A DNA stretch of 64,000 nucleotides from Saccostrea cucullata (Eukaryota). Below are positions 5,545 to 28,462 of this stretch, in pieces (position 1 is the stretch's first letter; each line of letters begins with the position of its first letter). The stretch is taken from positions 372,001 to 436,000 of the forward strand of contig NW_026933724.1 of NCBI RefSeq assembly GCF_032062105.1, given 5' to 3'. The notes below the pieces were generated by a model. It did no database searches, had not been told where the DNA came from, and saw nothing but the letters and a program-made list of their open reading frames with translations. The translations under genes were made by a program, and so were the position numbers.

Positions 5545-6822
5545 ATGAATGATTTTAAAATGGCTGGCAAGCAGAGAACCTTACCATTCACCTCTCCACG
5601 AAGAGAAACAAGAGCTGGCAGGGTGACGGAAAGAGATGCTAAATTGAGGCTAGAGGATAATGAGAGAGTTAATCATACTTCTGTGTCACATGACAAGTTA
5701 GAGAGACAGTCTACCATGCTCAAGTCCAGTCTAAACAGTTCCACAGTCAGAAGGCGACCGAACAAGAAGCCAAATCAAACCATAGCATCCAGTCAGAAGC
5801 TGAATCAGTTAATAATAGGAAGACCAAACATGACTGACAACAAAGTCAAAGACACCGACTCTTGTTTGAGACAACTGGAAGATCTATACAGCCAGGCTGA
5901 ACAGGTCTTAGGCTGTACAAAGGAAGAAGGCCTCTGTTTTGTAGAAGTTTTCAGAAGACTGTTGGAAGGATATGATGCCAAAAGCTCTAGGATAGAAGGA
6001 TTGCTGGTGGAAAAGGCAGACCTTTCAAAGAGAGTCATGGACCAAGAGGAGCGAATAGAAGAAAATTCAGAGTACTATAAAAAAGAACAAGCCAAATTTA
6101 AAAATCAAATAGATCAGAAAGATGTGGAAAATCAAAGACTGGATGATACAATTACAAAGCTTAAAGGAGAGAAAACTGAACTATTTCAAAAATTAAATAG
6201 ACTACAGGAACAGCTAGAGGAAGCAGCCATTAAACCACAAAAATCCTACTGCCAGGAATGCAGAACAGAAATCCTGGAACCTGTCTTTTCCTTAGAGTCA
6301 AAAGATGTGACTGAATTTGAAAAGGAAATTGGTCAAAATAGTATATCTTCCAAAATGAAAAATCTAGATAGATGTCATTCAGAAGAAACTCCATCTAGGA
6401 ACTTTGTAGTAAGAAAGCCCACTAAAAGTGATAGTGAGACATTAATCAAATCAGAACTACCAGATTCTGGTCCTCCCTCCCCCAGGCACGATTTCTTATG
6501 TGATTCATCACAGTCCACACCCAGATCATCAGTAAAATTAACTGAAACTGAAATATCTGGACGAGACCATTCAGACCCTGTAGCCAGTATCTTACTCAGA
6601 CCTTCAGTCCAACATAGGGATCTTCAGGTTGATAATCTACAATCCACGACAGAAATGTTTTGTAGATCCAGTTCCCGACACCACTACCTCCGCAGTAATA
6701 CAGAGATTTCATCCTCCAGCTCCTACTTCAGCTTTGCTAATCAGTCCGAGTACAGCGGGCCTGGACTCTGGTCAAGAGAGAGCAGTTCATTGTCATTTGC
6801 TAACAGTACATACTCAGAGTAG
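5545..6822 (+). CDS. Array gene 1: coiled-coil protein with doubled SFAN motif (425 aa, single coding exon)
   Basis: Long uninterrupted ORF. Splice acceptor ttttcag 2 nt before ATG. Contains QKLNQLIIGRP, a heptad-rich E/K/Q centre and C-terminal YFSFANQS / SLSFANST, all shared with neighbouring ORFs. Confidence 0.85.
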   Translation: MNDFKMAGKQRTLPFTSPRRETRAGRVTERDAKLRLEDNERVNHTSVSHDKLERQSTMLKSSLNSSTVRRRPNKKPNQTIASSQKLNQLIIGRPNMTDNKVKDTDSCLRQLEDLYSQAEQVLGCTKEEGLCFVEVFRRLLEGYDAKSSRIEGLLVEKADLSKRVMDQEERIEENSEYYKKEQAKFKNQIDQKDVENQRLDDTITKLKGEKTELFQKLNRLQEQLEEAAIKPQKSYCQECRTEILEPVFSLESKDVTEFEKEIGQNSISSKMKNLDRCHSEETPSRNFVVRKPTKSDSETLIKSELPDSGPPSPRHDFLCDSSQSTPRSSVKLTETEISGRDHSDPVASILLRPSVQHRDLQVDNLQSTTEMFCRSSSRHHYLRSNTEISSSSSYFSFANQSEYSGPGLWSRESSSLSFANSTYSE

Positions 6823-7099
6823 CTAGCACTGTCTAGCAGTATATACTCAGAGTAGCCAGTATTAGCTTAATATAAACACAGTCATCAAAGAGTTTTCAAA
6901 ATTATACATTTTCATGAAGTTTTTCCTGATTTCAGTATAAACAAGAACACTTCTATAAACCATCTATATAATTTATCTAAAATCACACGACCAGATCATT
7001 TATTACATGGTTGTAACTGGAAATGCTTTATCTTCTATAAAAACTGTCTACTGGAGTGTCAATCAATAAATGTCGCCACATACCCTCTGAGTCAATTTC

Positions 7100-8570
7100 A
7101 TTATACCCCCCGCTTGAAAAGCGGGAGGGTATATAGTAATTGTTAATTCCGTCCGTCTGTACGTCTGTCCGTCCGTCTGTTACGCTTTGGGGTACCCATC
7201 TCTTATCCGCAACTCCTCTCATACCACTAAATGAAATTTGATGAAACTTTCACAGAATCTTTATTACATATTGCCATAGTGCACCTCCTATTTTACTTTT
7301 TGATCCGACACATATTTTGGGTTTCCCGGCCACAGCAAAACATGGACTTTGCCATTATAACTATATGGAGGCGGGGGGTATCATTTATTTAATATACTGT
7401 AAATTCACATATTTTTGTGGGGTAAATTTTCATGGTTTGAGGAAAAAATATGGGTTCTTGGGGATTTAATTCAGGGGTTCAAAACTTTTTTTGTCATGGT
7501 CAAGTCCAGGACTTGAGGAGTAAATTTTAGGCAAGTCCGAGAAAGAAATTTCAGAGTCCATATTTACCTATACATCATTAAATTTATGTAACTTATAATT
7601 TATTTTCATTTGTTGCATTGAATGAATAAAGACTATTAATATAGGTTTTATTTGTCCTCCATAAACTGTCATATAGTCATACATGAGTATTTCAACACAA
7701 TACCAGACTGATAGAATATACATTACAATAACTTTTACAAATACTCACGACTGAATAAACCATGTTACAATAAATAGAAATTGGAATGTGCTGTAAGTCA
7801 CAGCTAAAACCGAAATTTAACAAACTCATTGCCGTTTGTCATATAGGAGGAAACATGAGGAATTGCGTAAAAGCAAGAGTCTAATCGCAATGGAAAATAA
7901 AAAGACGGATTGTATTTTCGAAACGTTCGTAATGTTTTATGGGTATTTTAACGCTCACAAACCCACATTTTTACTTAATACATTTGAGAATTTGCTTTAT
8001 TTTTAGCATTACGATCATTTTTTAACTTATAAAAAAAGATAAACAAGAAACATAGCCAAGTCCCAGGACTTTGGCGAATTCTAAATGCCGAGTCCGGATC
8101 CGGAATTTGTTAGTCCAGGACGTCGGACTTGAGGATTTTTGAACCCCTGTTAATTTTGCGGATGAAGAATTGTTGAATAGTAATATTATGTGAAAAATTA
8201 CATTTCATGGTGGACTTAAATTTGTGGGTCTCTTCATACCTAGAAAACCATGAAAATTAACACCCACGAAAATTAGTGATTTCACAGTACTTGGAAACCA
8301 CAAAATGTACAGATTTTATATTTATATTCCGTCCGTCCGTCCGTCTGTTACGCTTTGGGGTACCCATCTCTTATCCACAACTCCTCTCATACTACTGAAG
8401 GAAATTTAATGAAACTTTCACAGATTCTTAATTACATATTGCCATTGTGCACCTCCTATTTTACTTTTTGATCTGACATATATTTTTGATTTTCCAGAGC
8501 AAAACATGGACACTGCCATTATATTCATATGGGGGGGGGGGGGGGTATCATTTAGTGAGCTCATTGCTCA
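7100..8570 (-). mobile_element. HINE-like element (partially duplicated) with nested TA MITE (7397-8288) and CAG..CTG element (7472-8149)
   Basis: Terminal hairpin cccgcttgaaaagcggg, (CCGT)n microsatellite and a duplicated body (7148-7390 vs 8328-8555). Inner TIR caggggttcaaaa/ttttgaacccctg with ttaatt 6-bp TSD. Confidence 0.7.
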
Positions 8571-8821
8571 TAGTACCTCTAGTTTGAATATGTATTGCTT
8601 GGTACTCTGGCATTTGTAATTACACTGTTCATCAACCTCATGATCCATAAAATTGACCTTTGACCTACTTATAAAAAAAGATTCATTTTGCCAATATTCA
8701 GAATATTTCTTACATCTAAGAGGTAAATCTATGCTATTTAATAAGTGCACTGTTTGCCAGAAAACATGAAAAAAATTTCAGAGTTGCCATCAACTAGATC
8801 TTAACCTTTGTGCTAATTATC

Positions 8822-10051
8822 AACAAGAGGCCCATGGGCCACATCGCTCACATGAGAAGCTTTGACAATTCTGTTCTTTACTAGATTTCCCCCTTGTAAT
8901 ACATATTGTGACCCCACCCTACCCCACTAATCATAATTTAGACAATTTGAAATCTACACTACCCCAGGATGCTTCCACATAAGTTTCAGCTTTTCTGGCC
9001 CAGTAGATTTTCAAAGATTTTTCCTATATATTTCTATGTAAAACTTTGATTCCCCATTGTGGCCCCGTCCTACCCCCGGGGGTCATGATTTGAACAATTT
9101 TGAATCTATATACACCTCTCAAGGATGCTTTCACATAAGTTTCAGCTTTTCTGGCCCAGTGGTTCTTGAGAAGAAGATTTTCAAATATTTTTCCTATATA
9201 TTTCTATGTAAAACTTTGATTCCCCATTGTGGCCCCGCCCAATCCCCGGGGGTCATGATTTTAACAATTTTGAATCTACACTACCCCAGGATGCTTTCAC
9301 ATAAGTTTCAGCTTTTCTGGCCCAGTGGTTATTAAGAAGAAGATTTTCAAAGATTTTTCCTATATATTTCTATGTAAAACTTTAATTCCCCATTGTGGCC
9401 CCGCCCAATCCCCAGGGGTCATGATTTGAACAATTTAGAATCTACACTACCCAAAGATGCTTTCACATAAGTTTCAGCTTTTCTGGCCCAGTGGTTATTA
9501 AGAAGAAGATTTTCAAAGATTTTTCCTATATATTTCTATGTAAAACTTTGATTCCCCATTGTGGCCCCGCCCAATCCCCGGGGGTCATGATTTGAACAAT
9601 TTAGAATCTACACTACCCCAGGATGCTTTCACTTAAGTTTCAGCTTTTCTGGCCCAGTGGGTCTTGAGAAGATTTTTAAAGATTTTTCCAATATTTTTCT
9701 ATGTAAAACTTTGATTCCCCATTGTGGCCCCGCCCAATCCCCGGGGGTCATGATTTTAACAATTTAAAATCTACACTACCCCAGGTTGCTTCCACATACG
9801 TTTCAGCTTTTCTGGCCCAGTGGTTCTTGAGAAGAAGATTTTTTAATGACCCAACCCTATTTTTGTCTTTTCTTGATTATCTCCCCTTGTGAAGGGATTT
9901 GGCCCTTCATTTTAACAATTTAAATTTCCCTTTATATAAGCATGCTTTGTACCAAGTTTGGTCAAAATTGGCCCAGTAGTTCTTGAGAAGAAGTGGAAAA
10001 TGTGAAAAGTTTACGGACGGACAGACGGACGGACGGACAACGGACACAATG

Positions 10052-10096
<45 letters not shown>
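8822..10096 (+). mobile_element. HINE/Helentron-type element with ~6 satellite units
   Basis: aacaagaggcccatgggccacatcgctcac start, tandem ~166-bp units, (GACG)n and the same terminal hairpin as 1668-2952. Confidence 0.85.
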
Positions 10097-10097
<1 letters not shown>

Positions 10098-10274
10098 TGT
10101 TCTGGACATTCAGTGATTTTATTTGTGTCCTTCGACACAAAAGATCGTTGAAGCTGTCTGTATTTTAATCAGTATGGCAGCAGCTGTATAAATTTTAACC
10201 ATTAAGTGGTGTTTGCTGCTATATAAAGAACTATAAGTGGAATATAGCATTTTTTGCCCCCCCCCCCCCCCAAT

Positions 10275-10860
10275 CAAGTAAGCAGGCTCTGAAAACATTA
10301 AGTCTCTTAAATGTTGCTATGTCAGTGGGCAGAGCATTCCAGTCCCTGATGGTCCTGGGGTAGAAGGATCCCATATGAACTTGGGTGTCACTGGATGGTA
10401 TGTGCAAAGAATGCCCTCCCATGTTACAGCTGAGTCTTGATGGTGGCACTAGTTTGCCTGATGTTTCAATTCTGACTAGTACCTTGTGGATCTTATATAG
10501 AAGGATTAACCTGGCCCTCTTTCTACACTCCTCCAGTGTTTCCCAATGCAGGGTGTCCAGCATATCTGTGACCGACGAGGTGTTGTGGTATCAGTTAGTA
10601 ACATACATGGCTGTCCTGCATTGGACCATCTCAATCTTATATATATATCATCTTTCATGTATGGGTCCCAGGTAGTACAAGCATACTCTAGGGCAGGTCT
10701 TACGAGTGACTTGTAGGCTTTCTCTTTGATGTTTGCATTTCTTATGTTCAAGTTACGTTTTAGAAAGCTAATGGTTATTATATTTATTGTTAGCTTTCTT
10801 GCAGATAGTGGATATATGATGGTTCCATTTCATATCTGATGTAATTGATACACCTAGATA
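10275..10860 (-). mobile_element. 5'-truncated, frameshifted LINE (C-terminal region after reverse transcriptase)
   Basis: Minus-strand peptides KEKAYKSLVRPALEYACTTWDPY, MLDTLHWETLEECRKRARLILLYKI and SFYPRTIRDWNALP are typical of the non-LTR retrotransposon ORF2 C-terminus. Split across frames. Confidence 0.85.
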
Positions 10861-12121: not shown

Positions 12122-13591
12122 ATGGCACAGAACCAGACAAAGAGAGGCAAAAACTCCAAGTCAAGTCCCAGTGACAAGGAGATTGCCAGCAAAGGAGAGG
12201 CTACAAAGAGTGAAAATGATCAGGATCCACACCCAACAGATTCCAGCAGGAAAGTCACAGAGAAGGGGAAAACTTCTGAGAATTCAACAAAGAAATCATT
12301 GGAACAATCTAGAACATCCCTAGATTTAACCAAGAAACATTCGGACCAGGCCAAAAATCAAGGAGAAACAGCCAAGGGCACAAAACCAAAAACAAGCTCA
12401 ACCAAAAAAGTTTTAAAAATAGAGAGGAATCATAGTGAAGCCAAAAAGATTCTGTGTCAAATGAACAGTCAGCTCACAGAACTTCTACTGGGCCGGCCTA
12501 GTTTAACAGAGAGTCCGACAGACTTAACGCGAAGGTCACTGAGTGCTATACAGACCTTGACCAAGGACATTGGGTCTGTTCTCGACACGTCAAGTAAGAA
12601 ATCGAGTTTTCTTGAGGACATAGGACATCTCTTGCAGGAAATTTCTCAAATCAAGCAAATGCTACATAAATGTGAGTCTAATTTAAGAAGTGAAAAAGAA
12701 CTAGTGAAGTTCCACACCAACAGAGCCAGAACATTTCAGAACGAAATTGAGAAACTGAAGGTGGAGAAAAAGCAAGTAGCTGACAAAAATAAGGAATTGG
12801 AAGATACAATAATGGAGTTGGAAAGTAAATTCATGCAAACAAGGTTAAGTCATCAAAATGCCATAAAAATACATACTGAAAAGCAGGCAGGTCTGCAGGA
12901 CAAGGTCAATAAATATGAATTCTCATTATCGTCATTGGAGGAAAAGAATTCAGAGCTTACCACGGACAATCAGAGTCTGAAAGACAAAATTCTGGAGTTA
13001 GAACAAAGAAATAAAGCCCTAGAAAAGAAGTGTCAGGGGTACCATAAAGACATCGAGAAAGTTAATCATAAAAACAAACACCTGGAAAACAAAAACAGGA
13101 AACTCCAGACCGAAGCCGATATGATGAACGTTCGAAACATAGAATTAAAAAATAAGAACAAATCAATTGTAAAAGAATCAAATCATTCTGAGGAGAAAAT
13201 CAAAGACTTGGAAGAAAAAGTCCATAATTTATCATCTGAACTAGAAACTTGTTACACTGAAAATGATGGGCTTAGGGATCAAATTCATCACCTAAAATTA
13301 AAGCTTTCTGAATATGAAGATGAGTCTGATGTGTTAATAGAGGATTACACTCAGGTATTGAAGGAGAGAGGTGAAATATACAGGAGGCGATTGTCTGGAT
13401 CGTTTACTCCATCAGCATTACACAAACTGCGGAGGGATGATAGTGAACACTCCCTGATCAGTTGTGCCAACAGTGGACTAAGTTCTACCCTAGAGAGTCA
13501 GGGTAGAGTCTCGGCCGCCGCTAGGCCACGCTCAGAACTCTCTGATGTCAGCTTCGCAAACAGTTCCCACTCAGATGAAGTGCCGAGGTGA
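12122..13591 (+). CDS. Array gene 2: coiled-coil protein with SCANS/SFANS motifs (489 aa)
   Basis: ORF with SQLTELLLGRP, a long coiled coil, LISCANSG and DVSFANSS. Candidate 5'UTR intron 11661-12090 (gtaagc...tacag). AATAAA near 13758. Confidence 0.87.
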   Translation: MAQNQTKRGKNSKSSPSDKEIASKGEATKSENDQDPHPTDSSRKVTEKGKTSENSTKKSLEQSRTSLDLTKKHSDQAKNQGETAKGTKPKTSSTKKVLKIERNHSEAKKILCQMNSQLTELLLGRPSLTESPTDLTRRSLSAIQTLTKDIGSVLDTSSKKSSFLEDIGHLLQEISQIKQMLHKCESNLRSEKELVKFHTNRARTFQNEIEKLKVEKKQVADKNKELEDTIMELESKFMQTRLSHQNAIKIHTEKQAGLQDKVNKYEFSLSSLEEKNSELTTDNQSLKDKILELEQRNKALEKKCQGYHKDIEKVNHKNKHLENKNRKLQTEADMMNVRNIELKNKNKSIVKESNHSEEKIKDLEEKVHNLSSELETCYTENDGLRDQIHHLKLKLSEYEDESDVLIEDYTQVLKERGEIYRRRLSGSFTPSALHKLRRDDSEHSLISCANSGLSSTLESQGRVSAAARPRSELSDVSFANSSHSDEVPR

Positions 13592-16221
13592 AATAGGAAG
13601 TGATGATAAGTAGACTTCTTAAGGACTGATATAAAATCAAGCAGACCATCAATGTATTGAATTTCAACAAGTTGTGACACCTGGATGTAATGATTTTGAT
13701 CTCGATTACAAAGTCTGTATTTACTTACTGCCACAAATACTCAAGTGTTAAAATTCAATAAAACTGTTGATAATAGATGTCCAAATATTGCTTGTCAAAT
13801 CTTTTTTCAAATAAATAATGCAATGTAAGATAATCACCCCTCTTAAAGTATTTCCGTGATGACGTATGTTTTACTTTACTTGTAAAGAAATCTAGAAGTT
13901 GCATCTATTTAAAGAATTACTTTATCATGGAGGTCAACAGATCAACAGCATAGGGGAAGCAAAATATGTGGTCCACTTATTGCCAAAGCTAGTTTCTATA
14001 TCATAATCTTGGCCTGAAAAGGCATATCAAATTCTTTTAAATGATCATACAATTGATATTATACTTGAAAAAAAAAAATTATTGGTTTCTGTACAAAACA
14101 AGAATTGCCAATGTATGTATAAGTACTGCAATCAGCAACGGACTGCAAGGTGGTGTACCTATGGCAACAGTAAACAACTGTAAAGAAATTTTATTTCAGG
14201 AATCGTCAAATTTTGTTTGCTTGAGCCCACAAACCCTCTTCACACAAGTGTGCACATTTTCTAAACATTCAATTTACTTTATCATAAACAACATGACCAT
14301 GTTAATACCTCTTAATTCAATGATGAAATATTCAATCAATCCACAATAAAAGGTGTATCATCTGTCTGTCAATTATTTTTATAATCATAAATGTTCAAAG
14401 TACACTTTTATATCTGTTCAATATCATTATCTCTGAGAGTGTTCAAAATAATTCATTACTTCATATATTTTCTTAAATTAAACCAGAAGTCTATGACAAG
14501 ACTGTAGCTCCACAGTTTGTACTGATAACAAAGGAAGAGAAAAGCAACACTTGGACTGCAACTGCAATAAATGGAATCATTATAATAATCCATATTTCAG
14601 TTTCTTTTTGTAGGAAGAGTAGACTTATGAAAAAATTTAAACACATTTCTATTTTTGTAACCATGGCAACTTCGTTTTTGTAACCATGGTAACTCCATTC
14701 ATCAAATTCTAAAACCGAAATAAACAATTATGAATCTTGGTGTTGTCTACTTGTGTGCAAATTTATATTGAAATAAGATCAAAACTGTTGGAGAAGTAGG
14801 ATTTTGAAAAAAAAATGACAGAAATTTTATTTTTAGTAACCATGGCAATATCATTCATTGAAATCAAAAAGCTGTAGAAACAAATATAAATTTTAGTGTT
14901 GTTAACTTGTGTGCCAAGTTATATTGAAATCAGACCCAAACTGTAGAAGTAACTTGGTAAATGTACTTCACAGAAATTTAATTTTTTAGTTGGCAACACC
15001 ATTCATTGAAATATATAAACCAATAAACAGAGTTATATAACTTGTGACCAAGTTATATTAAAATCAGAATAAATTTGTAGGATGGGGTAGCATTTTGAAA
15101 AATTTTTTACAAACATACAGGCAGATGGATGATAGACACTATACTATGAAATAAGATCTTCTGGTCTCGGACCAGTAGAGCTAAAAATTAATTCTACTTT
15201 TTAAAGAGAAAGATTGTAAAAAAAAAAAAAAGAACATTGTAAAAAAAGTGATCTTTGTTGGGATGGATATCTTTCCAGTGACTATAAAATTGTGAACAAC
15301 TTTTGATATCATGAATATCAAACATAAAATGGAGAGAGAGAGAGAGAGAAAAAGTCCCAACCACCTTTACTTATGTACTTGAACCAAAATTACTTGAATC
15401 AAGTCATTTGAGTCGTTTGGAAGTTTTTTTTTTTCTGTGTCCCAATAGGCTGGAGATAATGCGTTTTGACTGTAGATGGTGCTTTTTTTTTAACACATGG
15501 AGATTATTTACATCACAAAACCCATAAAATTTTCTGAAGTAAAAAATGAGATGATAAATGACACCCCATGCAGTGTGAAAACCGACAGAACATAACAAAT
15601 GACAAATCAATACCAAGAACCTGCATGTCTGCAAATAAAATAAAACAATATTTCTACCTTACACAGGACACCTCTATTTGCATCTCATTCACATATCTCC
15701 AAGTTAGGATATTTAAATGATATTTAAAAATACCTTGGCAAATTAATTTGACAAAAGAAGTAGTGATGAAACAAATCTTGTATTTATTCAGACGTAGGAC
15801 GAGAAAATTAGTGAGTTATCTATATCGTGTATGGATCAATTAAGCAAACAGAGTGTCAATCTGTCGATCCCCAATGTCAGCAAACAGTTTAATACTTAGA
15901 CCTTCTCTCATGCTGCCTAAAAAAAATAAGAAAACACTCCCATCATAAAATGTTGAATTTTTCATCAGTTTTACCTAAGGTTTACAAATACAGCAAGCCT
16001 AACCATTGATACAAAGCTACTGCCTCTTAGAATTAGCAGGTAACTTTTAAATAATTCAAACTTTAATTTTAATATATAGAATTGTACTTATGAATGTTAT
16101 CATTTTATAAGGTAGCGGAAATTATATATATATAACATTCAAATTTTTATGTTTGATTGCATGTAGTGAAAAATAAAAAGAAAAAAAATAAACAGACTTT
16201 AAAGTATTTTCTTGATCAGGA

Positions 16222-17205
16222 ATGGCAGGGCGTACAAACAGAACTGTGTTGAGGCTGCAGAGCTTCCCGATGGGGAGATCTAGACCAACTCCGCTACAAT
16301 CACGAAATCCTGTGTCTCCCAGAAAAACTAAAGGTGTGGCCACCAAACCACAGCCAGACAACCAAAAACTGGTAGTGGACCAGCTGTGTCAGTTCCTTCT
16401 GGGTTCAACTGCCATGAGTGATAATGCTTTCCTCAACTGTCAAAATACACTGAAAAAACTTGAACAGTTGCAAGCTGATATACTTAAAGAAGTACCGTGG
16501 GTAAAAGACCTGCCTGATCAGAATTATTTTGGAGGCATAATAGGACTTCTTTTGAAGGAATATCAGAAGCAAAAAAGTGATATTAAAAATTGGGTTGCCA
16601 ACTGTAGAGCAAATGAGAGGTTAATGGAATACAAAGGAAAACAAATCAAAGAACTCCAAAACAAGCATGAAATTCAGATACTGGCAAAAGATGAGGAAAT
16701 ACAAGGATTGGTTAAAGAGATAAGCCACCTGAAAGTGGAAAATAAAGGACTAACAGAGAACAATAACAAGCTACAGGAGCTAATTAGAAGGGAAGAAGAA
16801 GAGTGTAAGGAAAAATTGCAGAAATTTATATCTTCAGTGAATGTAAGTGAAATTGGGTCAAAGAACCAAAAAGAATCGAAACAAAGTAAAAGACCAAAAT
16901 CCACCTCCTCAGTTTCGGAGTGCCCATCCTCTCCTACAGGAAACTTTTCAAGAGAAACCTCAGGGAAATCTACCAGGAGTGATTCAGACACATGTGTTTC
17001 TTCTGTAAGTTTTGCCAACAGTGGGATTTCTACAGTACCTAACTTCAGGAATATAGAACAAGAGATCAGCGATATGTCAGAGTTAAGCTTTGCTAACAGT
17101 ACTCTTTCAGAACTTGGGAGATCTTGTTTACTATGTTCAAAAACATTCAACACTACACAAGTTTTTCTTTGTAACCAATGCATTGATAAATTCAAAATTA
17201 GTTGA
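16222..17205 (+). CDS. Array gene 3: coiled-coil protein with doubled SFANS and C-terminal CxxC-CxxC (327 aa)
   Basis: ORF with DQLCQFLLGS, coiled coil, SVSFANSG, ELSFANST and CLLC..CNQC. Candidate 5'UTR intron 16040-16219 ends 2 nt before ATG. Confidence 0.85.
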   Translation: MAGRTNRTVLRLQSFPMGRSRPTPLQSRNPVSPRKTKGVATKPQPDNQKLVVDQLCQFLLGSTAMSDNAFLNCQNTLKKLEQLQADILKEVPWVKDLPDQNYFGGIIGLLLKEYQKQKSDIKNWVANCRANERLMEYKGKQIKELQNKHEIQILAKDEEIQGLVKEISHLKVENKGLTENNNKLQELIRREEEECKEKLQKFISSVNVSEIGSKNQKESKQSKRPKSTSSVSECPSSPTGNFSRETSGKSTRSDSDTCVSSVSFANSGISTVPNFRNIEQEISDMSELSFANSTLSELGRSCLLCSKTFNTTQVFLCNQCIDKFKIS

Positions 17206-17842
17206 AAATTTTAGAATTCAATTTAAAAAAATTTAAGTAATTTTAAACAATGAACTTGTCATTGAATTTATAACGTTGCATGAATGTTTTAGATGAGAAA
17301 GTGTATAGTTAATGCCTCACCTTAATTATCGCTGACAAATAAGAAACTTACATAAATACATGTATACATTTTTAATTACTGACAAAAGAGATACTCCTTC
17401 AAAGGCATTTCACAATCTCCCTTTCTTTACAATAAAAGTTAGGTACACCTTTAGACAGGCTAAGACTATGGCCCAATTAAACAACAATGTAGATCAACAT
17501 GATTTCATTTCCAGCAATTATTTGTTACAAATGAAGTGCCTTAATTAAGAAAATGACTAGAAAATGAAATTTATTGCTTTGCAAGCCTAAAAATGACACA
17601 GTCTAATGCCAATGTTTGGAACAGAAAGTGTGCATGGTGAAAAATTATTCTCAACAATCACTTCATAACAGAGAATACCTACATTGGGTATGTATACTTT
17701 TTTTCATCAAAAACTAAAATAATTGATCTTTTTTTCCTTTTTAATTTTTTTTTTCATTTTATCAAAAAAAATCTTAGATATATTGTTACATAATAATAAA
17801 ATTTCTATTCCTTCAACCACCAGATTGGTTCATAACTAATAA

Positions 17843-18835
17843 ATGGAGGCTACAAAACATACAACCACTAACAAGATACAAAAGCCAAAAATCAAAAAGT
17901 CACCAAAAGGGAAAGCAAATAAAGTTAAAGGAGGAATGCCTCCTGGCAGAGAATCTACTGGACACAAACAGCTCCACAGGAGTAGAAACCAAGAAAATGG
18001 CAGCACTGAAGAATACGGTCCTATACACAAAACATTCAGCACCCAATTACATGACCTTCTGCTGGGAAAGTCAAATGATACTCTTCTAAACAAGATGGGG
18101 CATGCAATAGATCGTGGCAAAGAACTCGAGACCAGACTGAATCAGGAAATTCCAGGGGCAAAGAATGCAGAGAGTTTCTTTGACAAAGTTGATTTTACGA
18201 TTTCTGAGTTTATTTCAGTGAAAGGAAAAAGCAAATTAAAACTGACAAGAAAACTGAAAGAAATGCAAGAAGAAAAGCAGAAGCTGAAAGACAATTCCGA
18301 TGACTTAAGCCATTACATTGAAAATCTGAAAACCTGCACTGACCAGGAAAGCAAAAGTCATAGGAATGCCATCACATTTTACCTAGCAGAAAATAAAAAA
18401 CTAAAAGAAGAAATTGAAAATCTAAATACAAGGCAAATGTTGTTAGAAAGAGAGAAAAATGAACTACAAGAGGAATGTTCCACAAGTCTGAGCAGCCTTC
18501 ACAGGTTAGAAAATAAAACTATAAAACTGGCTACCAACAATAAGAAACTGAACCAGGAATTACAAGCAACAGCAACAGACAGAAAGAAACTTAAATCAAA
18601 GCACAGACAACTGGTGTTAGAAAACAAAGACTTGCATCATGAAAATGAGACGCTGAAAAAAAGGCTTGAGAACAATCCTTTAATTTGCGATTTAAATGCA
18701 GGTCAACATGATTGCAGAAAATGTATGTCTTCAGGGAATGAACAAGATTTTGTTAGAGACTGTGGAAGACTGTCATCTGCTAACACAGACTGTTCAGAAA
18801 TAAGTTTTGCCAACAGTTCATGTGCTGAAATTTAA
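17843..18835 (+). CDS. Array gene 4: coiled-coil protein with SFANS motif (330 aa)
   Basis: ORF with TQLHDLLLGKS, ESFFDKVDF, coiled coil and LSSANT..EISFANSS. Candidate 5'UTR intron 17688-17823. AATAAA near 18869. Confidence 0.85.
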   Translation: MEATKHTTTNKIQKPKIKKSPKGKANKVKGGMPPGRESTGHKQLHRSRNQENGSTEEYGPIHKTFSTQLHDLLLGKSNDTLLNKMGHAIDRGKELETRLNQEIPGAKNAESFFDKVDFTISEFISVKGKSKLKLTRKLKEMQEEKQKLKDNSDDLSHYIENLKTCTDQESKSHRNAITFYLAENKKLKEEIENLNTRQMLLEREKNELQEECSTSLSSLHRLENKTIKLATNNKKLNQELQATATDRKKLKSKHRQLVLENKDLHHENETLKKRLENNPLICDLNAGQHDCRKCMSSGNEQDFVRDCGRLSSANTDCSEISFANSSCAEI

Positions 18836-19307: not shown

Positions 19308-20168
19308 ATGCCAGAACCACCAAAACGAAGCAATTCCAAGCTAGGCCCTGTCGATAAAAGGAAAAATCGCCAGCCTATTTTTATGAAAACAACTATTGCA
19401 AGACGAGCAAAGGAACAGCAGGTCAGTAAGTGTTCACAGGAGCAGGACAATCTGATAAGACAAATCCACCAACTTGTACAAGGTTCTCATTTCTCTGGTA
19501 CCGACTCTGTTGCTGCTGCAAAAGAAACCCTCAGCCAACTGGAACATTTTATCATTGAGACTCAAAAACTTGTACCTACTGCACAAAGTGTGACATGCCT
19601 TGCAGAGCTAGCAGATCCACTTTCTACAATGGTCAAGCAGCTACAATTGGACTTACAAGAAAAAGAATCAGGGTGTGAACAACAGAAAAGGATGTCCGAG
19701 TTTTACCAACGCAAATTACAGGATGCCGAAAACAACCTGCAAATGCAGATAATCGAGTTTGAGGAAAAAATAAAAAACCTAACAAAAAATAACCAGGATC
19801 TTCAGGCAAAACTACGAAATTCCGAGTGCCAACTTAAAGAAGTGAACAAACGTTTTGAAGAGGTCAAAATAATGTGGGAACAACATAGGCAGCTGGAGAG
19901 AGTGAAGACTTGGGTCATTTCATCTCCAAAAGATTTTTTGGGAAGTGAAGAATCTAAATTAGTTGATTCAAAACTAAAAAGACCTATTTCTGCTTTCTCT
20001 GGAAGAAAAAACAAAGAACAAACACTATGCCCGAACAAACCTTGCAGAGTTGACAGTGCCATATCAACAATAAGCTGTGCTAATAGTGGAACTACTCATG
20101 TACCAAGTATAAGAAGGAAAAACAGTGGGCAGACAGACATCAGTTTTGCAAACTGTAGTGAAACATAA
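19308..20168 (+). CDS. Array gene 5: coiled-coil protein with SCANS/SFANC motifs (286 aa)
   Basis: First ATG is at 19308 (the track starts at a TTG, 19290). Contains RQIHQLVQGS, coiled coil, TISCANSG and DISFANCS. Confidence 0.83.
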   Translation: MPEPPKRSNSKLGPVDKRKNRQPIFMKTTIARRAKEQQVSKCSQEQDNLIRQIHQLVQGSHFSGTDSVAAAKETLSQLEHFIIETQKLVPTAQSVTCLAELADPLSTMVKQLQLDLQEKESGCEQQKRMSEFYQRKLQDAENNLQMQIIEFEEKIKNLTKNNQDLQAKLRNSECQLKEVNKRFEEVKIMWEQHRQLERVKTWVISSPKDFLGSEESKLVDSKLKRPISAFSGRKNKEQTLCPNKPCRVDSAISTISCANSGTTHVPSIRRKNSGQTDISFANCSET

Positions 20169-24400: not shown

Positions 24401-24957
24401 TGGAACTCCTTAAATACCCTTTCAGATCGATAATTATATGAATTCTTATTCATTGTTATATGACTATTTATAATGTTGATTTAAAAATTACATCAGTGGT
24501 ATTTCTTTTAAATGAAAATGAGGCGACATTATTTGAGCCCTTATATTGAGAATGGGTGATGAAGAAATTCCACAATTTTTATCCATATAATGTACATTAA
24601 TTTCTTTTATTTACTTCGATCATTTTACAATGCAAAGTATAAAGATTCTCCTGTCATTGCAAAGCTCCATAAATCACTTCTAATTTCATATCATGTTTAT
24701 AAACATTGGTATTTATGGTTAGATTAAAATGAACATCAATTTCTTCACATATGTATTTCTAAAATGCTTTTACAGGGTAAAAATTTCAACTTTTAATTAG
24801 ACCTTTCTGAGAACTTCAAAGAACCTTGAAGCACATTAAGAGGCATATAATGAAAATTATTGCATGAAAAGATATAATTTTCAAGCTTCATTTTGAGACT
24901 TTTTGAATTAAATTATAAAATAAAGAGTTGTCCTTCCTGGCTGAGGATCGGAGTCCC
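21500..24957. mobile_element. TTAA-flanked non-autonomous DNA transposon (Kolobok-like), host of a nested element
   Basis: TTAA-ggtactccgatcctcag ... ctgaggatcggagtccc-TTAA. Homologous to 29818-30485. Confidence 0.8.
21771..24558. mobile_element. CAC..GTG element with 4-bp TSD (CMC/Chapaev-like), non-autonomous
   Basis: 22-bp perfect TIR cacccattctcaatataagggc with ATGA duplicated on both sides. About 10 internal copies of gtaacgtacatttc in both orientations. Confidence 0.78.
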
Positions 24958-26158
24958 TTAATTCAACATTTATTATCTAATTTAAATAAACAAAACTTTC
25001 CAGATTTGGGCAACAATAAACTTCTTCATGCACATTAAAAGAAAGAGGAGACTTAGCCAAGATTTTTTGAGATTTAAACAGTAATACATTGAATATTGTA
25101 TAAACTTTCAAAGAAAAAACTTGAAAAAAAAACTAAAGAAACTAATTCAAAAGAAATCACCAAGATACAATTTTTGGGGGGCTTTGTATGAATATCCTTG
25201 ACCTTTGGACCAGAACATCTTTGACCTTATAGGACCAGAATATTACAGATGCTATTTTTAAGTTACTAGGAGCTATGATATGCTTCATTTAAAAAGCTTA
25301 AAAAGAAACAAAGTATCATTCTTTTGCAATATACATTGACTTAAAATAAGTCTTAGGGCCTTAAATCTATGTTAAAGGGAGTTTGTGATATATGTTATTC
25401 CTATGTAAAATCTCAGACTTAGTTATGGTACAGGAACTTAAATACTTACTAAGCAGACAAAATGCATCATGGATTTCTCACAGGTACTTGTGGACTGGAC
25501 CCCTCCCCCACCACTCCGGTTTGTTTATGTTGTACCCCCACTAGTCATTCTGGGTTTAAAAACATGTATTTATATCATTTTCACCTAAAATGTTGGTCCA
25601 CACTGTCTCTACATATATTTCTGTCTCAGTCCATGCTATCGGATTGACTCTGCAGTTCGTAAAAATCCCACAATATCTCCTAAAACAGCATGTCCACTAG
25701 CACCTGTGGGATTTCTGTCCTTGACCTCTGACCTTTTCATCTCAAAATCTTATAGGGTGTTGTGATATAGTTTCATTGAAAAAGGTCAAAAGCTTTATTT
25801 TTTCAAACATTCAAATAGAAAGCATTAATGTTAATCTTTGACCTTTTTACAATTCATTAGAATTTTTTTTTTTTACGCCATAAGGAGTTATTATATAAAA
25901 TTCATTGCAAAAGCTCAAAAGCTTTTTGAAATAACATCCAAAAATGAAGTGTTTCACATTGAGAGATGACAGACTGGTGGATACACCCAAATTTTTCAGT
26001 GAGAGTGGAGCACAAACACTATCTATCAGGATGTTAAATTTTTAACAATATACTGCATCTTCAAATGATTGATGCTTTTGGGTCAAAATGTCCAGAAAAG
26101 TGTATCAAGAAAAAAACATTTTCTGCAGTGACTATCGCAAAGTCAATGAAGAATAGAA

Positions 26159-26450
26159 CTTATTCTACAAAGTCCAAAAAATGATGACATTTTGAAAGCA
26201 TTGCTGCACAGATACTTTTTTTCAATAAGATCATTTATCTACTTAAAACCATACACTGAGCTTATTCTACAAAGTCCAAAAAATGATGACATTTTGAAAG
26301 CATTGCTGCACAGATACTTTTTTCAATAAGATCATTTATCTACTTAAAACCATACACAGCTTATACAAACAAAAAATGATGACATTTTGAAAGCATTGCT
26401 GCACAGATACTTTTTTTCAAAAAGATCATTTATCTACGTAGACATACACT
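26159..26450. repeat. ~100-bp tandem repeat, three copies
   Basis: aaaaaatgatgacattttgaaagcattgctgcacagatactttttt..aagatcatttatctac occurs three times. Confidence 0.85.
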
Positions 26451-26887
26451 GATAAAACATATTCAGGTATTACAAAGCAACTTTAAGATGCATTGACTGA
26501 GTCACAAACAATATACACATGACAATGGATTCTCAGTCACTGATGGAACAGATTAAGACGTACGTCCTGCTCATTGTTCTTATTGTTCAGGCACACTGCA
26601 CTATGTCACTAGAAACTCTGCACAGCAATTTAATCCAGAGGTGCAAATTAATAGATTTATATGACAATCTGAAGGTAAGTTTCCTTATATTTGTCACCAA
26701 AACTAATAGTATTTTTTCTTTTTAAAAAATTATTCCCATCCACAGTTTTTCACTTTCTTGAAGTATTTTGTTTAAATCAGCTACAAATGATACTGAATTT
26801 GTAATATATGTTATTTAATGATGCGTTCATTGAATTTTTGATTTTCGCAAATATCCAAATTAATTTCCCTTTTTAAAATTTCAAGCT

Positions 26888-28462
26888 ATGAATAAGACTT
26901 CGGGTAAGGAAACCTCCACAGTGAATATCACATACAAACCATCAGCAAAAGAACCTGCTGTTCCCAATAACACAAACAAAACAGCTGGAAAAGAATTCAC
27001 AGGGGTATCAACTAAGCGGCCTAATCAGAAACAACGAAATCGCCAAAAAGTTACGAAAATAATTTCTCCAAAGAAAGTGTACGCAGAATGCTCCACACAA
27101 ACCGAGGAGGAATGCTCAACAGACGTTAATCAGCTGACAAAAGCGGCTCACATTATCTACTCCTTCTGTCATACAAATGCAGGTGAACTTTTGCCCATTG
27201 AAAAAGTCTTAGATGAGTCCTCAAAGATTCTGCAGGCCCTCGCTCAACTTAGCAAGTCTTTTGACTTCTCGGACATCCCAGAATCCATTCCTTTCACCAA
27301 GAAGTTGCGAGAAGAGGTAAAATCTATTGAAAAGTGTCACAACCGCTGCAGGGAGCTTGTTTCTTCAGAAGAACTACAGTCCTTCTTGCCAAAAACAAAA
27401 CTCAAAGGCCTTGGTACACTTGTCCACTGTAAGATGCTATTAGAAGAGTTTAAGCTCAGAGAAAGAAAGTTTAGACAAGCTGTGATAAGTATTATAGAAT
27501 CTGAAAATCTGGGACTCAAAAGAGCTGAAAACATCTTGTCAAAGATGGACCACAAAGAGCAAATTCACGACTTGGTGGATAGTGTTGCAGAAAACCAGAG
27601 AATTTCCAGCAACAAAGATAAGGATGAACTGCATGACCAATACCGAGAGATAAGCATCAAGCAGAAAAACCAAATCCAGAAACTGGAGATGAAGTTAGAA
27701 AAATACGAGGAAGACAAAGAAAAGATAAGGGATGAGTGCAGAAGACAGGTGATAGAAATAGAAAAAGGTCTTATATTGTGTAATCAACAATGGGAGCGAA
27801 AACTGCAGGAACAATCAAACAAACTGGAACTGTATGATTCAGAAAAAACAAAGTTACTAAGATTACTAGAAGAAGAAAAGCAGAAGATAGCCCACAGAGA
27901 TATTGAAACCAGAAAGCTTAACAAACTGTATCACGAAACAAAAGACAAATTAAAAGAAACGGAAAAATTAAACTACAACATGTCAAAGGCCAGGCGAAAG
28001 TCCCATAAAAATTTAGTTGATAAAGCATGCAGCGCTAACCTGAAAGCAGAATATACTAGTACCCACTGCCAAACAGAAAATTCCATTTCAGTGCCCAAAT
28101 CAAACACTTCTGGTTTTAGTTCTAACACAGCTTTGTCTTCAGCTGATCAACAGAAAATGAGCTCTCACAATAAACATCAAAATCACTTCCACGGCCCAAT
28201 AAATAATGTCCATCTCTATCAAATCTTTCCTGAGAGAAGTTCTAATTCCTCAATACCTCACAAAGAATCTGTACAAAGTGGAAAGAGCAGGTCTAGCTCT
28301 CGCCTGCATATCTCTACAGGAACACGGAGGCAATCGTTGACCAATCAAAATCAAGAACAAAGCGTGACTTTTGAACACCATGAAGAGACTGAATTTGTTT
28401 ATCGCTCAGAATCAACCATGTCTTTTGCAAATTCTGATTCTCTACACGGAGACGATTATTAA
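26888..28462 (+). CDS. Array gene 6: coiled-coil protein with TQT motif and single SFANS (524 aa)
   Basis: Long ORF with coiled coil and terminal STMSFANSD. Candidate 5'UTR intron 26675-26885 (gtaagt...tcaag) ends 2 nt before ATG. Confidence 0.85.
   Translation: MNKTSGKETSTVNITYKPSAKEPAVPNNTNKTAGKEFTGVSTKRPNQKQRNRQKVTKIISPKKVYAECSTQTEEECSTDVNQLTKAAHIIYSFCHTNAGELLPIEKVLDESSKILQALAQLSKSFDFSDIPESIPFTKKLREEVKSIEKCHNRCRELVSSEELQSFLPKTKLKGLGTLVHCKMLLEEFKLRERKFRQAVISIIESENLGLKRAENILSKMDHKEQIHDLVDSVAENQRISSNKDKDELHDQYREISIKQKNQIQKLEMKLEKYEEDKEKIRDECRRQVIEIEKGLILCNQQWERKLQEQSNKLELYDSEKTKLLRLLEEEKQKIAHRDIETRKLNKLYHETKDKLKETEKLNYNMSKARRKSHKNLVDKACSANLKAEYTSTHCQTENSISVPKSNTSGFSSNTALSSADQQKMSSHNKHQNHFHGPINNVHLYQIFPERSSNSSIPHKESVQSGKSRSSSRLHISTGTRRQSLTNQNQEQSVTFEHHEETEFVYRSESTMSFANSDSLHGDDY

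What the first reader, a model, noticed from the sequence alone, without database searches (positions are those of the whole stretch)
6721..28440. Conserved, usually doubled C-terminal linear motif S-x-[ILVMF]-S-[FC]-A-N-S in six otherwise barely alignable proteins
Seen: SYFSFANQS/SSLSFANST (gene 1), SLISCANSG/SDVSFANSS (2), SSVSFANSG/SELSFANST (3), RLSSANT/SEISFANSS (4), STISCANSG/TDISFANCS (5), STMSFANSD (6). The last copy sits within ~10 aa of the stop in five of six. I do not recognise it as a catalogued motif. Retention in disordered tails despite wholesale divergence implies a binding or phosphorylation site. Inference: the S-x-x-S and S-x-x-x-S spacings suit CK1/GSK3 relay phosphorylation, or a pLxIS-like kinase-gated docking site.
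Basis: partly seen in the sequence, partly recalled or inferred. Interest (0 to 1): 0.82.

Follow-up and report, generated by a model that had tools for sequence, protein, structure and literature searches.

The report
Conserved tail motif in oyster coiled-coil genes
Six neighbouring oyster genes for two-stranded rod-like proteins of unknown function all keep the same short serine-rich peptide, usually twice, in their floppy tails; it is probably a phosphorylation-controlled docking site, but its partner is unknown.

Summary
Six single-coding-exon genes on the + strand (5545-28462) each carry the core S-[F/C]-A-N in the last 8-68 residues. There are ten core hits in all six reading frames of the window, all in these tails, against 0.015 expected in shuffled tails.

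The window is from an oyster (Saccostrea-like). The genes form an orphan family: about 19 clusters among 1.84 billion representative proteins, no Pfam family, and the only named members are "uncharacterized" proteins of Saccostrea echinata and Ostrea edulis. Six orthogroups and their gene order predate the Ostrea/Saccostrea split.

In 23 motif instances Ser(0) and Asn(+3) never change while their codons do. Motif columns are 87% identical within orthogroups, against 58% for the rest of the tail.

The tails are predicted to be disordered. The rod is modelled as a parallel, in-register dimer. RNA contigs from a close relative show spliced 5'UTRs.

Extended consensus: R-x-x-S-x-x-[ST]-[DE/x]-hydrophobic-S-[FC]-A-N-S.

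Best reading: a phosphorylation-primed docking motif displayed multivalently. It fails the defining residues of pLxIS, phospho-FFAT, the beta-TrCP degron and RHIM. The partner and the biological role remain unknown.

The parts
5545..6822 (+). gene 1, 425 aa, single coding exon
   Evidence: ORF. Ortholog XP_061183280 of S. echinata, 76% identical.
6721..6744 (+). gene 1 motif copy 1, SYFSFANQ
6784..6807 (+). gene 1 motif copy 2, SSLSFANS, 4 aa before the stop
12122..13591 (+). gene 2, 489 aa
   Evidence: ORF. The 489-aa S. echinata protein P0001 is 89% identical end to end.
13451..13474 (+). gene 2 motif copy 1, SLISCANS
   Evidence: Invariant S-x-I-S-C-A-N-S-G-L-S-S-T-L in five orthologs.
13541..13564 (+). 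gene 2 motif copy 2, SDVSFANS
   Evidence: SDVSFANSSHSDEVPR is invariant in five orthologs.
16040..16219 (+). 5'UTR intron of gene 3 (GT..AG), ending 2 nt before the ATG
   Evidence: Joint in a contig of run X2, whose RNA label is only a guess. Ends checked in the sequence.
16222..17205 (+). gene 3, 327 aa
   Evidence: ORF. Orthologs P0010, P0011, P0129, P0131, S. echinata L041:15532-16515 and O. edulis L039:936-2006.
16360..16509 (+). gene 3 N-terminal helices (residues 47-96), including the family block Q-L-x-x-[LF]-L-L-G
   Evidence: AF2 pLDDT 87-92. Gly61 is at least 90% conserved in 28 sequences. Part of the modelled dimer interface.
16528..16848 (+). gene 3 long helix (residues 103-209), modelled as a parallel in-register coiled coil
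   Evidence: AF2 pLDDT 94-98. Dimer model score 0.62 against best control 0.00, with i-to-i contacts.
16999..17022 (+). gene 3 motif copy 1, SSVSFANS
   Evidence: pLDDT below 50.
17077..17100 (+). gene 3 motif copy 2, SELSFANS
   Evidence: pLDDT below 50.
17125..17181 (+). gene 3 CxxC-x12-CxxC zinc-ribbon-like tail after the motif
   Evidence: Seen in the sequence. Kept in six orthologs. No Pfam family above cut-off. pLDDT about 60.
17688..17823 (+). 5'UTR intron of gene 4 (GT..AG)
   Evidence: Joint in an RNA-library contig of run X3. Ends checked.
17843..18835 (+). gene 4, 330 aa, the fastest-evolving member
   Evidence: ORF. The only ortholog found is S. echinata L041:17126-18199, 69% identical. 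No hit in the word-index search.
18764..18787 (+). gene 4 degenerate copy, GRLSSANT
18794..18817 (+). gene 4 motif, SEISFANS
19308..20168 (+). gene 5, 286 aa counted from the ATG at 19308
   Evidence: ORF. Orthologs P0012, P0014 and L041:18713-19594 start MPE/MPD.
20064..20087 (+). gene 5 motif copy 1, STISCANS
20133..20156 (+). gene 5 motif copy 2, TDISFANC, preceded by RRKNS
26888..28462 (+). gene 6, 524 aa, with a single motif copy
   Evidence: ORF. Orthologs O. edulis XP_055996961 (P0070), P0018 and P0130.
28412..28435 (+). gene 6 motif, STMSFANS

Best explanation
The S-x-hydrophobic-S-[F/C]-A-N-S peptide (an 'SFANS box') is the family-defining short linear motif of an oyster-restricted family of coiled-coil scaffold proteins.

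Each protein has five parts: a basic disordered N-terminus, a small helical head, a long helix that pairs in parallel and in register with a second chain, a Ser-rich disordered tail, and one to three SFANS boxes near the end of that tail. A dimer therefore holds two to six boxes side by side at one end of the rod.

The most likely mechanism is a phosphorylation-gated docking site. A basophilic kinase primes the Ser at -6 (R-x-x-S). A CK1-type relay then runs S(-6) to S/T(-3) to S(0); alternatively a Polo-like kinase ([D/E]-x-S-hydrophobic) hits S(0) directly. The hydrophobic(-1)-pSer-Phe/Cys-Ala-Asn stretch then binds an unidentified partner domain, with avidity from the multiple copies.

Shown here: the motif, its protein-level purifying selection, its placement in predicted disorder, the family's narrow range, its transcription in a close relative, and the modelled parallel dimer.

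Inferred: phosphorylation, the kinases involved, and docking as opposed to some other use. The partner and the pathway are unknown.
For: - Specificity: ten core hits, all in the six tails, against 0.015 expected in shuffled tails.
- Conservation: both copies are invariant in gene 2 orthologs of about 58% identity. Every full-length family member among 1.84e9 representatives keeps one to three copies, whereas the unrelated coiled-coil hits have none.
- Protein-level constraint: in 23 instances Ser0 is 23/23 using AGC, AGT, TCA and TCT; Asn is 23/23 using AAT and AAC; Ala is 22/23 using all four codons; position -1 is always I/L/V/M/F.
- Motif columns are 0.87 identical against 0.58 for other tail columns within orthogroups, p = 5e-16.
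- Age: six starred orthogroups, with O. edulis nested in three of them, and conserved gene order.
- Disorder: tail residues 212-300 of gene 3 have pLDDT below 50.
- Dimer: the gene 3 homodimer model scores 0.62 against a best control of 0.00. That mark was reached by 21 of 30 solved homodimers and 0 of 23 solved monomers. The runs agree in at least 34% of contacts, partner pLDDT is at least 57, the contacts are i-to-i, and the tails are outside the interface.
- Phospho-relay spacing: R-x-x-S(-6)-x-x-[ST](-3)-x-x-S(0) recurs across paralogs.
- Expression: RNA-library contigs of a 90-95% identical relative cover genes 3-5 and carry GT..AG 5'UTR splice joints.
Against: - No phosphorylation data, no partner and no experimental link to any pathway.
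- Kinase consensus matches (CK1, basophilic, Polo-like, NEK-like F-x-x-S) are low in information and common in any Ser-rich tail.
- The invariant Phe/Cys-Ala-Asn is not explained by any kinase consensus.
- The first copy often lacks the acidic residue at -2.
- Gene 6 has only one copy, so doubling is not essential.
- The dimer model comes from a predictor calibrated mostly on microbes, and coiled coils may score from memory.
- The motif's frequency in the rest of the oyster proteome could not be measured.
Confidence: 0.5

Rival explanations
1. A pLxIS-type innate-immune adaptor motif. TBK1/IKK-family kinases phosphorylate Ser(0), which has a hydrophobic residue at +1, and the phospho-motif recruits an IRF-like or other transcription factor. 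The family would then be oyster-specific antiviral or antibacterial adaptors.
For: - Hydrophobic-Ser core in the disordered C-terminal tail of an oligomeric scaffold.
- The neighbouring genes were noted by the scan as CARD-like with RHIM-like tails, and one exon gives a sub-threshold CARD hit, E 0.045.
- The cluster and the neighbouring gene 8 are syntenic in O. edulis.
- Gene 3-type members end in a small zinc-binding-like module, as NEMO, optineurin and TANK do (my own knowledge; sequence).
Against: - The defining Leu at -3 is Ser/Thr in 22 of 23 instances.
- F/C-A-N has no pLxIS counterpart.
- No homology to the neighbouring genes by profile-profile comparison (probability 9%).
- CARD is below Pfam's cut-off on one exon and absent on the others.
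- The O. edulis gene 8 ortholog has no Pfam hit on record.
- No UBAN-type motif and no Pfam hit in the six proteins.
- A paper search for pLxIS together with oyster terms listed nothing relevant.
Confidence: 0.1
2. A phospho-FFAT-like motif. Phosphorylated Ser(0) at FFAT position 4 lets the tail bind the MSP domain of VAP proteins on the endoplasmic reticulum, as the Kv2.1 and Kv2.2 channel tails do (SFISCAT, SFTSCAT).
For: - Copy 1 of genes 2 and 5 (S-L-I-S-C-A-N, S-T-I-S-C-A-N) shares I-S-C-A and the upstream serines with the Kv2.1 core SFISCAT (PMC6380216).
- Phospho-FFATs need pSer/pThr at position 4 and tolerate much variation (PMC7705450).
- The serine/acidic tract upstream fits the FFAT flank.
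Against: - With Ser(0) as position 4, the key aromatic at position 2 is Y in only 2 of 23 instances and otherwise D/E/S/T/L/P/R.
- Position 5 is the bulky Phe in 17 of 23, where FFATs have Ala or Cys.
- In the other register (hydrophobic residue as position 2), position 4 is Phe/Cys, not acidic or phosphorylatable.
- The invariant Asn has no FFAT role.
Confidence: 0.06
3. A self-association or amyloid-type signalling motif. The two copies per chain would form short beta-strands that stack (RHIM or HET-s style) or dock back onto the protein's own head or rod (autoinhibition, head-to-tail polymerisation).
For: - Alternating hydrophobic and small-polar residues followed by Asn and often Gly (I-S-C-A-N-S-G).
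- Two pseudo-repeats 21-30 residues apart.
- The neighbouring gene 8 has a conserved V-T-I-N-I-H-N-H-G-H-F-Q-M-G-G tail.
- The motifs sit at the protein terminus, as fungal and bacterial amyloid signalling motifs do (my own knowledge).
Against: - No I/V-Q-I/V-G core.
- Only two hydrophobic positions per copy, in a very Ser-rich polar context.
- Neither the AF2 monomer model nor the dimer model docks the tail anywhere: pLDDT below 50, and the tails are outside the interface.
- Gene 6 has a single copy, and the spacing varies from 10 to 44 residues.
Confidence: 0.08
4. The motif is a leftover of common descent with no function of its own, or it is conserved for a nucleic-acid-level reason.
For: The six genes are paralogs, so a shared peptide could in principle be inherited.
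Against: - Paralogs are 15-25% identical overall, with stems of 0.8-2 changes per site, yet Ser0 and Asn are 23/23.
- Synonymous codons vary at every core position, including a switch of serine codon class, which rules out a DNA or RNA element.
- Motif columns are significantly more conserved than their flanks.
Confidence: 0.03

Closest known systems
pLxIS motif of STING, MAVS, TRIF and IRF-3 (ELM LIG_IRF3_LxIS_1)
   Same: A hydrophobic residue followed by a phosphorylatable Ser, in the disordered C-terminal tail of an oligomerising adaptor, with further serines around it.
   Different: Leu at -3 is replaced by Ser/Thr. The Ser is followed by an invariant Phe/Cys-Ala-Asn-Ser. The motif is usually doubled. 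No IRF or TBK1 link is shown. It is restricted to oysters.
Phospho-FFAT motifs, especially Kv2.1 SFISCAT and Kv2.2 SFTSCAT (PMC6380216, PMC7705450)
   Same: The I-S-C-A string, a Ser at the position that must be phosphorylated, and a Ser-rich or acidic upstream flank.
   Different: The position-2 aromatic anchor is not conserved. Position 5 is usually Phe. The invariant Asn is unexplained. The carriers are soluble coiled-coil proteins rather than membrane-anchored ones.
Primed multi-site phosphorylation cassettes (R-x-x-S priming plus CK1 pS-x-x-S relay; Polo-like kinase [D/E/N]-x-S-hydrophobic)
   Same: S(-6), S/T(-3) and S(0) at three-residue spacing behind a basic residue. Acidic residue at -2 and hydrophobic residue at +1 in most terminal copies.
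   Different: These consensus patterns do not require the invariant Ala-Asn. They describe who might write the mark, not who reads it. Nothing was tested experimentally.
NEMO / optineurin / TANK-type adaptors (coiled coil plus C-terminal zinc finger)
   Same: A dimeric coiled-coil rod and a Ser-rich regulatory region. In gene 3-type members only, a terminal CxxC-x12-CxxC module.
   Different: No sequence or profile similarity. No UBAN-type motif. The finger is CCCC rather than CCHC or C2H2, and five of the six paralogs lack it.

Membership tests
Short linear motif in an intrinsically disordered region (generic class) | Lies in a region without stable structure | tested here: met
   AF2 pLDDT below 50 over residues 212-300 of gene 3, which holds both copies. 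The tails are not part of the dimer interface.
Short linear motif in an intrinsically disordered region (generic class) | A few fixed positions conserved well above the flanks across orthologs | tested here: met
   0.87 against 0.58 identity, p = 5e-16. Ser0 and Asn3 are 23/23.
pLxIS (IRF-3 recruitment motif) | Leu at -3 relative to the phospho-Ser | tested here: not met
   S 16, T 6, V 1 of 23 instances.
pLxIS (IRF-3 recruitment motif) | Ile or another hydrophobic residue at -1, and Ser at 0 | tested here: met
   I/L/V/M/F in 23/23 and Ser in 23/23.
pLxIS (IRF-3 recruitment motif) | Phosphorylated by TBK1/IKK-epsilon and bound by an IRF association domain | not testable with these tools
   Needs kinase and binding assays.
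FFAT / phospho-FFAT (VAP MSP-domain ligand) | Aromatic Phe/Tyr at core position 2 | tested here: not met
   With Ser0 as position 4, position 2 is Y in 2 of 23 and otherwise D/E/S/T/L/P/R. Definition taken from PMC6380216 and PMC7705450.
FFAT / phospho-FFAT (VAP MSP-domain ligand) | Asp/Glu or phosphorylatable Ser/Thr at position 4 | tested here: met
   Ser in 23/23 in that register.
FFAT / phospho-FFAT (VAP MSP-domain ligand) | Small residue (Ala; Cys in Kv2) at position 5 | tested here: not met
   Phe in 17 and Cys in 6 of 23.
beta-TrCP phosphodegron D-S-G-x-x-S | Gly directly after the first Ser | tested here: not met
   Phe or Cys in 23/23. The S-x-x-x-S spacing itself is present in 18/23.
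RHIM / amyloid signalling motifs | [IV]-Q-[IVLC]-G core tetrad | tested here: not met
   No instance has it.
RHIM / amyloid signalling motifs | Forms stacked beta-strands | tested here: inconclusive
   The models give coil at low confidence. Such predictors do not model amyloids.
CARD-coiled-coil genes next door (window 29-49.6 kb) | Detectable homology to those genes | tested here: not met
   hhalign probability 9% over 21 columns of coiled coil.
Any Pfam family or solved structure | Match above the curated cut-off or a significant fold match | tested here: not met
   Only sub-threshold coiled-coil noise. Foldseek against the PDB found nothing at E <= 0.001. The ESM Atlas gave generic coiled coils only.

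The most novel reading that the evidence does not exclude
The SFANS box is a previously undescribed kinase-gated docking code of lophotrochozoan signalling. An oyster-specific set of six dimeric adaptors, each displaying two to six phospho-boxes, would recruit a common reader (an IRF, Rel, FHA, BRCT or MSP-type domain). They would do so next to a block of CARD-like coiled-coil genes with amyloid-like tails. Together these would form a lineage-specific signalling hub analogous to, but independent of, the vertebrate pLxIS system.
Probability: 0.1. Interest if true: 0.8.

Novelty: new variant of a known kind. Interest (0 to 1): 0.45.

Why it matters
Oysters have greatly expanded, poorly understood signalling gene families, and most lineage-specific genes have no handle for experiments. 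This eight-residue peptide is a ready-made handle. It has been kept for the whole history of the oyster family in six otherwise fast-evolving paralogs, so it can be synthesised with and without phosphate and used to fish for its reader.

If it is not, the motif is a new entry for linear-motif catalogues.

As it stands, this is a solid, uncatalogued motif in an orphan family. It is of moderate interest because no function or pathway is yet attached.

Tried and rejected
1. Genome-wide search for the doubled motif as a degenerate DNA pattern. It gave 356 hits against 73 for the reversed control, but the listed hits are dominated by a satellite (ACTTTCGCGAATAAACGCG...) and other repeats. It is useless as a proteome background, so the motif's frequency outside the family in oyster proteins remains unmeasured.
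2. Family profile against the window's own 1.17-Gb assembly. Only the six window genes were found.
3. Pfam on all six proteins, PDB sequence profiles, Foldseek against the PDB and the ESM Atlas with the whole protein and the tail alone. These gave only generic coiled-coil or chance hits.
4. Literature search for the peptide strings. Only acronyms and unrelated glycopeptides turned up.
5. Literature search for oyster, CARD and coiled-coil, and for pLxIS with oyster terms. The listed papers held nothing on this family.
6. Homology to the neighbouring CARD-like genes. None was found.
7. N-glycosylation sequon. The terminal copies often read N-S-[ST], but the first copies read N-S-G, gene 6 reads N-S-D, and the proteins have basic hydrophilic N-termini with no signal-peptide-like stretch (sequence). 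Rejected.
8. Also considered from memory and rejected on sequence: LIR (F-x-x-[ILV]), SxIP, BRCT pS-x-x-F, D-box, KNL1 MELT and the dynein-adaptor CC1 box (A-A-x-x-G).
9. Public runs. Only small-share holders were found. Laying them showed contigs from a relative rather than the same species. The contig end at 20399 lies beside a genomic A-run, so it is not counted as a poly(A) site.
10. Exon-wise search for Pfam CCDC73 in the window's own genome. Nothing rang, in the controls either, so it is uninformative.
11. Look-ups of P0015 and P0017 contigs to name their species. They are not on record.
12. For the neighbouring two-exon genes, the exons were searched separately by reference.

Full report
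**What is there**

The window has 33-36% G+C, sparse genes and no N. Between 5.5 and 28.5 kb the + strand carries six long ORFs:
- gene 1: 5545-6822
- gene 2: 12122-13591
- gene 3: 16222-17205
- gene 4: 17843-18835
- gene 5: 19308-20168, counted from its first ATG
- gene 6: 26888-28462

A six-frame scan finds the core S-[F/C]-A-N ten times in the 64 kb. All ten are on the + strand and all lie in the C-terminal tails of these six ORFs. The Ser of the last copy lies 8-13 residues from the C-terminus in five genes and 39 in gene 3. Shuffling the last 110 residues of the six proteins gives 0.015 core hits on average against 10 observed. Shuffling the window gives 1.6.

**What the genes are**

Gene 2 is 89% identical over its whole 489 residues to a RefSeq protein of the oyster Saccostrea echinata, so the window is from a Saccostrea-like oyster. 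The six proteins are 15-25% identical to each other but share one plan:
- a basic, low-complexity N-terminus
- a block Q-L-x-x-L-L-L-G, with a Gly conserved in at least 90% of 28 sequences
- a long helix
- a Ser/Thr-rich tail with the motif

No Pfam family reaches its cut-off. PDB sequence profiles, Foldseek and the ESM Atlas give only generic coiled-coil or chance matches.

An exhaustive HMMER search of 1.84 billion representative proteins with a family profile found 65 hits. Only the top 15, down to E = 1.5e-08, are family members (P0001 and P0006-P0019). Adding the gene 2 orthologs P0002-P0005 gives 19 sequences. P0020 (E = 3.3e-07, no motif) and the weaker hits are ordinary coiled-coil proteins without the motif. 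The only named members are 'uncharacterized protein' entries of S. echinata and Ostrea edulis. The rest come from assemblies of public sequencing runs. The window's own 1.17-Gb assembly holds no further copy.

A maximum-likelihood tree gives six strongly supported orthogroups on long stems. A further clade (P0016/P0017, with three motif copies) is sister to the gene 5 group. O. edulis sequences nest inside the gene 1, gene 3 and gene 6 groups. Gene order is conserved: genes 2-3-4-5 in S. echinata, and a gene 3-like gene, a gene 6-like gene and then the neighbouring gene 8 in O. edulis. The duplications therefore predate the Ostrea/Saccostrea split.

**Are they real, expressed genes?**

Contigs from runs of a relative about 90-95% identical cover the ORFs of genes 3, 4 and 5. 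Two contigs skip 16040-16219 and 17688-17823. The gene 4 joint is in an RNA-seq library (X3). The gene 3 joint is in run X2, whose RNA label is only a guess. Both skipped stretches are bounded by GT..AG and end just upstream of the ATGs of genes 3 and 4. These are spliced 5'UTRs, so each gene has a non-coding first exon and one coding exon. The RefSeq model of the gene 2 ortholog equals the single ORF.

**How strongly is the motif kept?**

In five gene 2 orthologs of about 58-89% identity, both copies and their near flanks are invariant: H-S-x-I-S-C-A-N-S-G-L-S-S-T-L and S-D-V-S-F-A-N-S-S-H-S-D-E-V-P-R. All full-length family members have one to three copies.

Over the 23 instances for which DNA is in hand, the counts are:

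| Position | Residues |
|---|---|
| -3 | S 16, T 6, V 1 |
| -2 | variable; D/E in 10 |
| -1 | always I/L/V/M/F |
| 0 | Ser 23/23 |
| +1 | F 17, C 6 |
| +2 | A 22, C 1 |
| +3 | Asn 23/23 |
| +4 | S 18 |

Ser(0) uses AGC, AGT, TCA and TCT. Ala uses all four codons and Asn both. The constraint is therefore on the peptide and not on DNA or RNA. Within orthogroups, motif columns are 0.87 identical against 0.58 for the remaining tail columns (Mann-Whitney p = 5e-16).

**Extended motif**

Upstream of most copies there is a further Ser at -6, often preceded by Arg/Lys. Examples are RPRSELSDVSFANS, RRKNSGQTDISFANC, RRLSKDTEISFANS, HRTLSKNSDLSFANS, RRDDSEHSLISCANS and RRRNSEHSVISCANS. This gives R-x-x-S(-6)-x-x-[ST](-3)-[DE/x]-hydrophobic-S(0)-[FC]-A-N-S(+4).

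**Structure**

AlphaFold2 on gene 3 with the 28-sequence family alignment gives the following:
- disorder for residues 1-39
- confident helices at 47-96
- one long helix at 103-209 (pLDDT 94-98)
- pLDDT below 50 for 212-300, which holds both motif copies
- about 60 for the terminal CxxC-x12-CxxC segment

A two-copy model supports a homodimer. The score is 0.62 against a best control of 0.00. That mark was reached by 21 of 30 solved homodimers and 0 of 23 solved monomers. The runs agree in at least 34% of contacts and partner pLDDT is at least 57. The predictor is calibrated mainly on microbes, and coiled coils may score from memory. The tightest contacts are residue i with residue i (163-163, 160-160, 110-110), which means a parallel, in-register coiled coil over 102-188 with the head helices 47-90 packed on it. 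The tails are not in the interface. Both tails thus leave the same end of the rod, and a dimer displays two to six boxes together.

**Most likely mechanism**

The data fit a short linear motif read by another protein and most probably switched by phosphorylation. The three-residue Ser spacing behind a basic residue is what a priming basophilic kinase followed by CK1 would use. The acidic -2 and hydrophobic +1 of most terminal copies also fit Polo-like kinases, and F-x-x-S fits NEK-type kinases for S(+4). These assignments rest on my knowledge of consensus patterns and are weak evidence. The invariant Phe/Cys-Ala-Asn is not explained by any kinase preference and is most simply the part the reader protein recognises. 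I put 0.5 on 'phospho-gated, multivalently displayed docking motif' and about 0.9 on the weaker claim that it is a functional peptide under purifying selection.

**Comparison with known motifs**

- pLxIS: the hydrophobic-Ser core and the setting are alike, but the defining Leu at -3 is Ser/Thr in 22 of 23 instances.
- Phospho-FFAT: the Kv2.1 and Kv2.2 cores SFISCAT and SFTSCAT (PMC6380216; pSer at position 4 required, PMC7705450) share I-S-C-A with copy 1 of genes 2 and 5. The position-2 aromatic anchor is not conserved here (Y in 2 of 23), and position 5 is Phe in 17 of 23. The alternative register puts Phe/Cys at the acidic position.
- beta-TrCP degron: the S-x-x-x-S spacing is present, but the Gly is missing.
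- RHIM: there is no [IV]-Q-[IV]-G core.
- NEMO, optineurin and TANK: only the general plan is shared, plus a different kind of terminal finger in gene 3-type members.

I therefore file the motif under none of these.

**Context**

Other first-reader notes call the genes at 29-49.6 kb CARD-like with RHIM-like or N/Y-rich tails. I tested this only in passing. One 45-residue first exon (29189-29323) gives CARD at E 0.045, below the cut-off. The others give nothing. A profile-profile comparison finds no homology between those genes and the SFANS family. The immune reading therefore rests on weak neighbourhood evidence. In both O. edulis and S. echinata annotations the cluster lies inside a long gene on the opposite strand, which carries the Pfam CCDC73 family in O. 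edulis.

**Verdict**

This is a real, strongly constrained and uncatalogued linear motif. It defines an orphan, oyster-restricted family of dimeric coiled-coil proteins. The pLxIS analogy fails on its defining residue, and the kinases, the reader protein and the pathway remain open.

Noticed in passing
window 17125-17181 (gene 3); also P0010, P0011, P0129, P0131, L039:936-2006: Only the gene 3 orthogroup continues past the second motif into a conserved CxxC-x12-CxxC segment (C-[IL]-L-C-S-x-T-x-x-T-T-x-x-F-L-C-x-Q-C-I-D-K). It looks like a small zinc ribbon and matches no Pfam family above cut-off.
   Followed up: partly
L038 (P0016) and P0017: A seventh clade, sister to the gene 5 group, carries three motif copies (xxFSCANS, xxFSCANS, TEISFANS). 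It has no counterpart in this window or in the window's assembly.
   Followed up: partly
window 38136-38270 and 38408-39268; L039:18228-19504: The neighbouring two-exon gene 8 is much better conserved between this oyster and O. edulis than the SFANS genes are. Its first exon is 89% identical, and the tail V-T-I-N-I-H-N-H-G-H-F-Q-M-G-G is identical. Neither of its exons matches Pfam CARD.
   Followed up: partly
window 29189-29323: This 45-residue exon gives a sub-threshold Pfam CARD hit (E 0.045, 14.2 bits against a cut-off of 23.9). This is the only CARD signal I could reproduce for the neighbouring genes.
   Followed up: partly
L039 and L041, whole loci (minus strand): In the O. edulis and S. 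echinata annotations the whole SFANS cluster lies inside a gene of 1050-1061 residues on the opposite strand (Pfam CCDC73 in O. edulis). The cluster therefore appears to be nested in introns. An exon-wise search of this genome with that family found nothing.
   Followed up: partly
window 10231-10563 (minus strand): A 110-residue ORF whose sequence (...FYPRTIRDWNALP...) looks like the C-terminal end of a retrotransposon reverse-transcriptase gene common in marine invertebrates. It lies between genes 1 and 2.
   Followed up: no
window 54205-54840 (+ strand): An ORF made of about eight tandem repeats of a 24-residue unit (DILLLLTHHYP[PL]AV[PS][VA]PHSAVYII[RT]). It is probably a 72-bp minisatellite rather than a gene.
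   Followed up: no
window about 31.5-36 kb: A G+C rise to 0.43-0.45 against about 0.33 elsewhere. Two ORFs here share the peptide ...STE...H[RQ][RQ]LN[LP][PS]DHCIP[IL]SLKDH..., which suggests copies of a repeat element.
   Followed up: no
G000 contigs C2007, C3765, C5902 and many others (not in the window): A very abundant satellite with a unit of about 21 bp (ACTTTCGCGAATAAACGCGTA / ACTTTCGCGTTATAACGCGAA) turned up as false matches to the back-translated motif.
   Followed up: no
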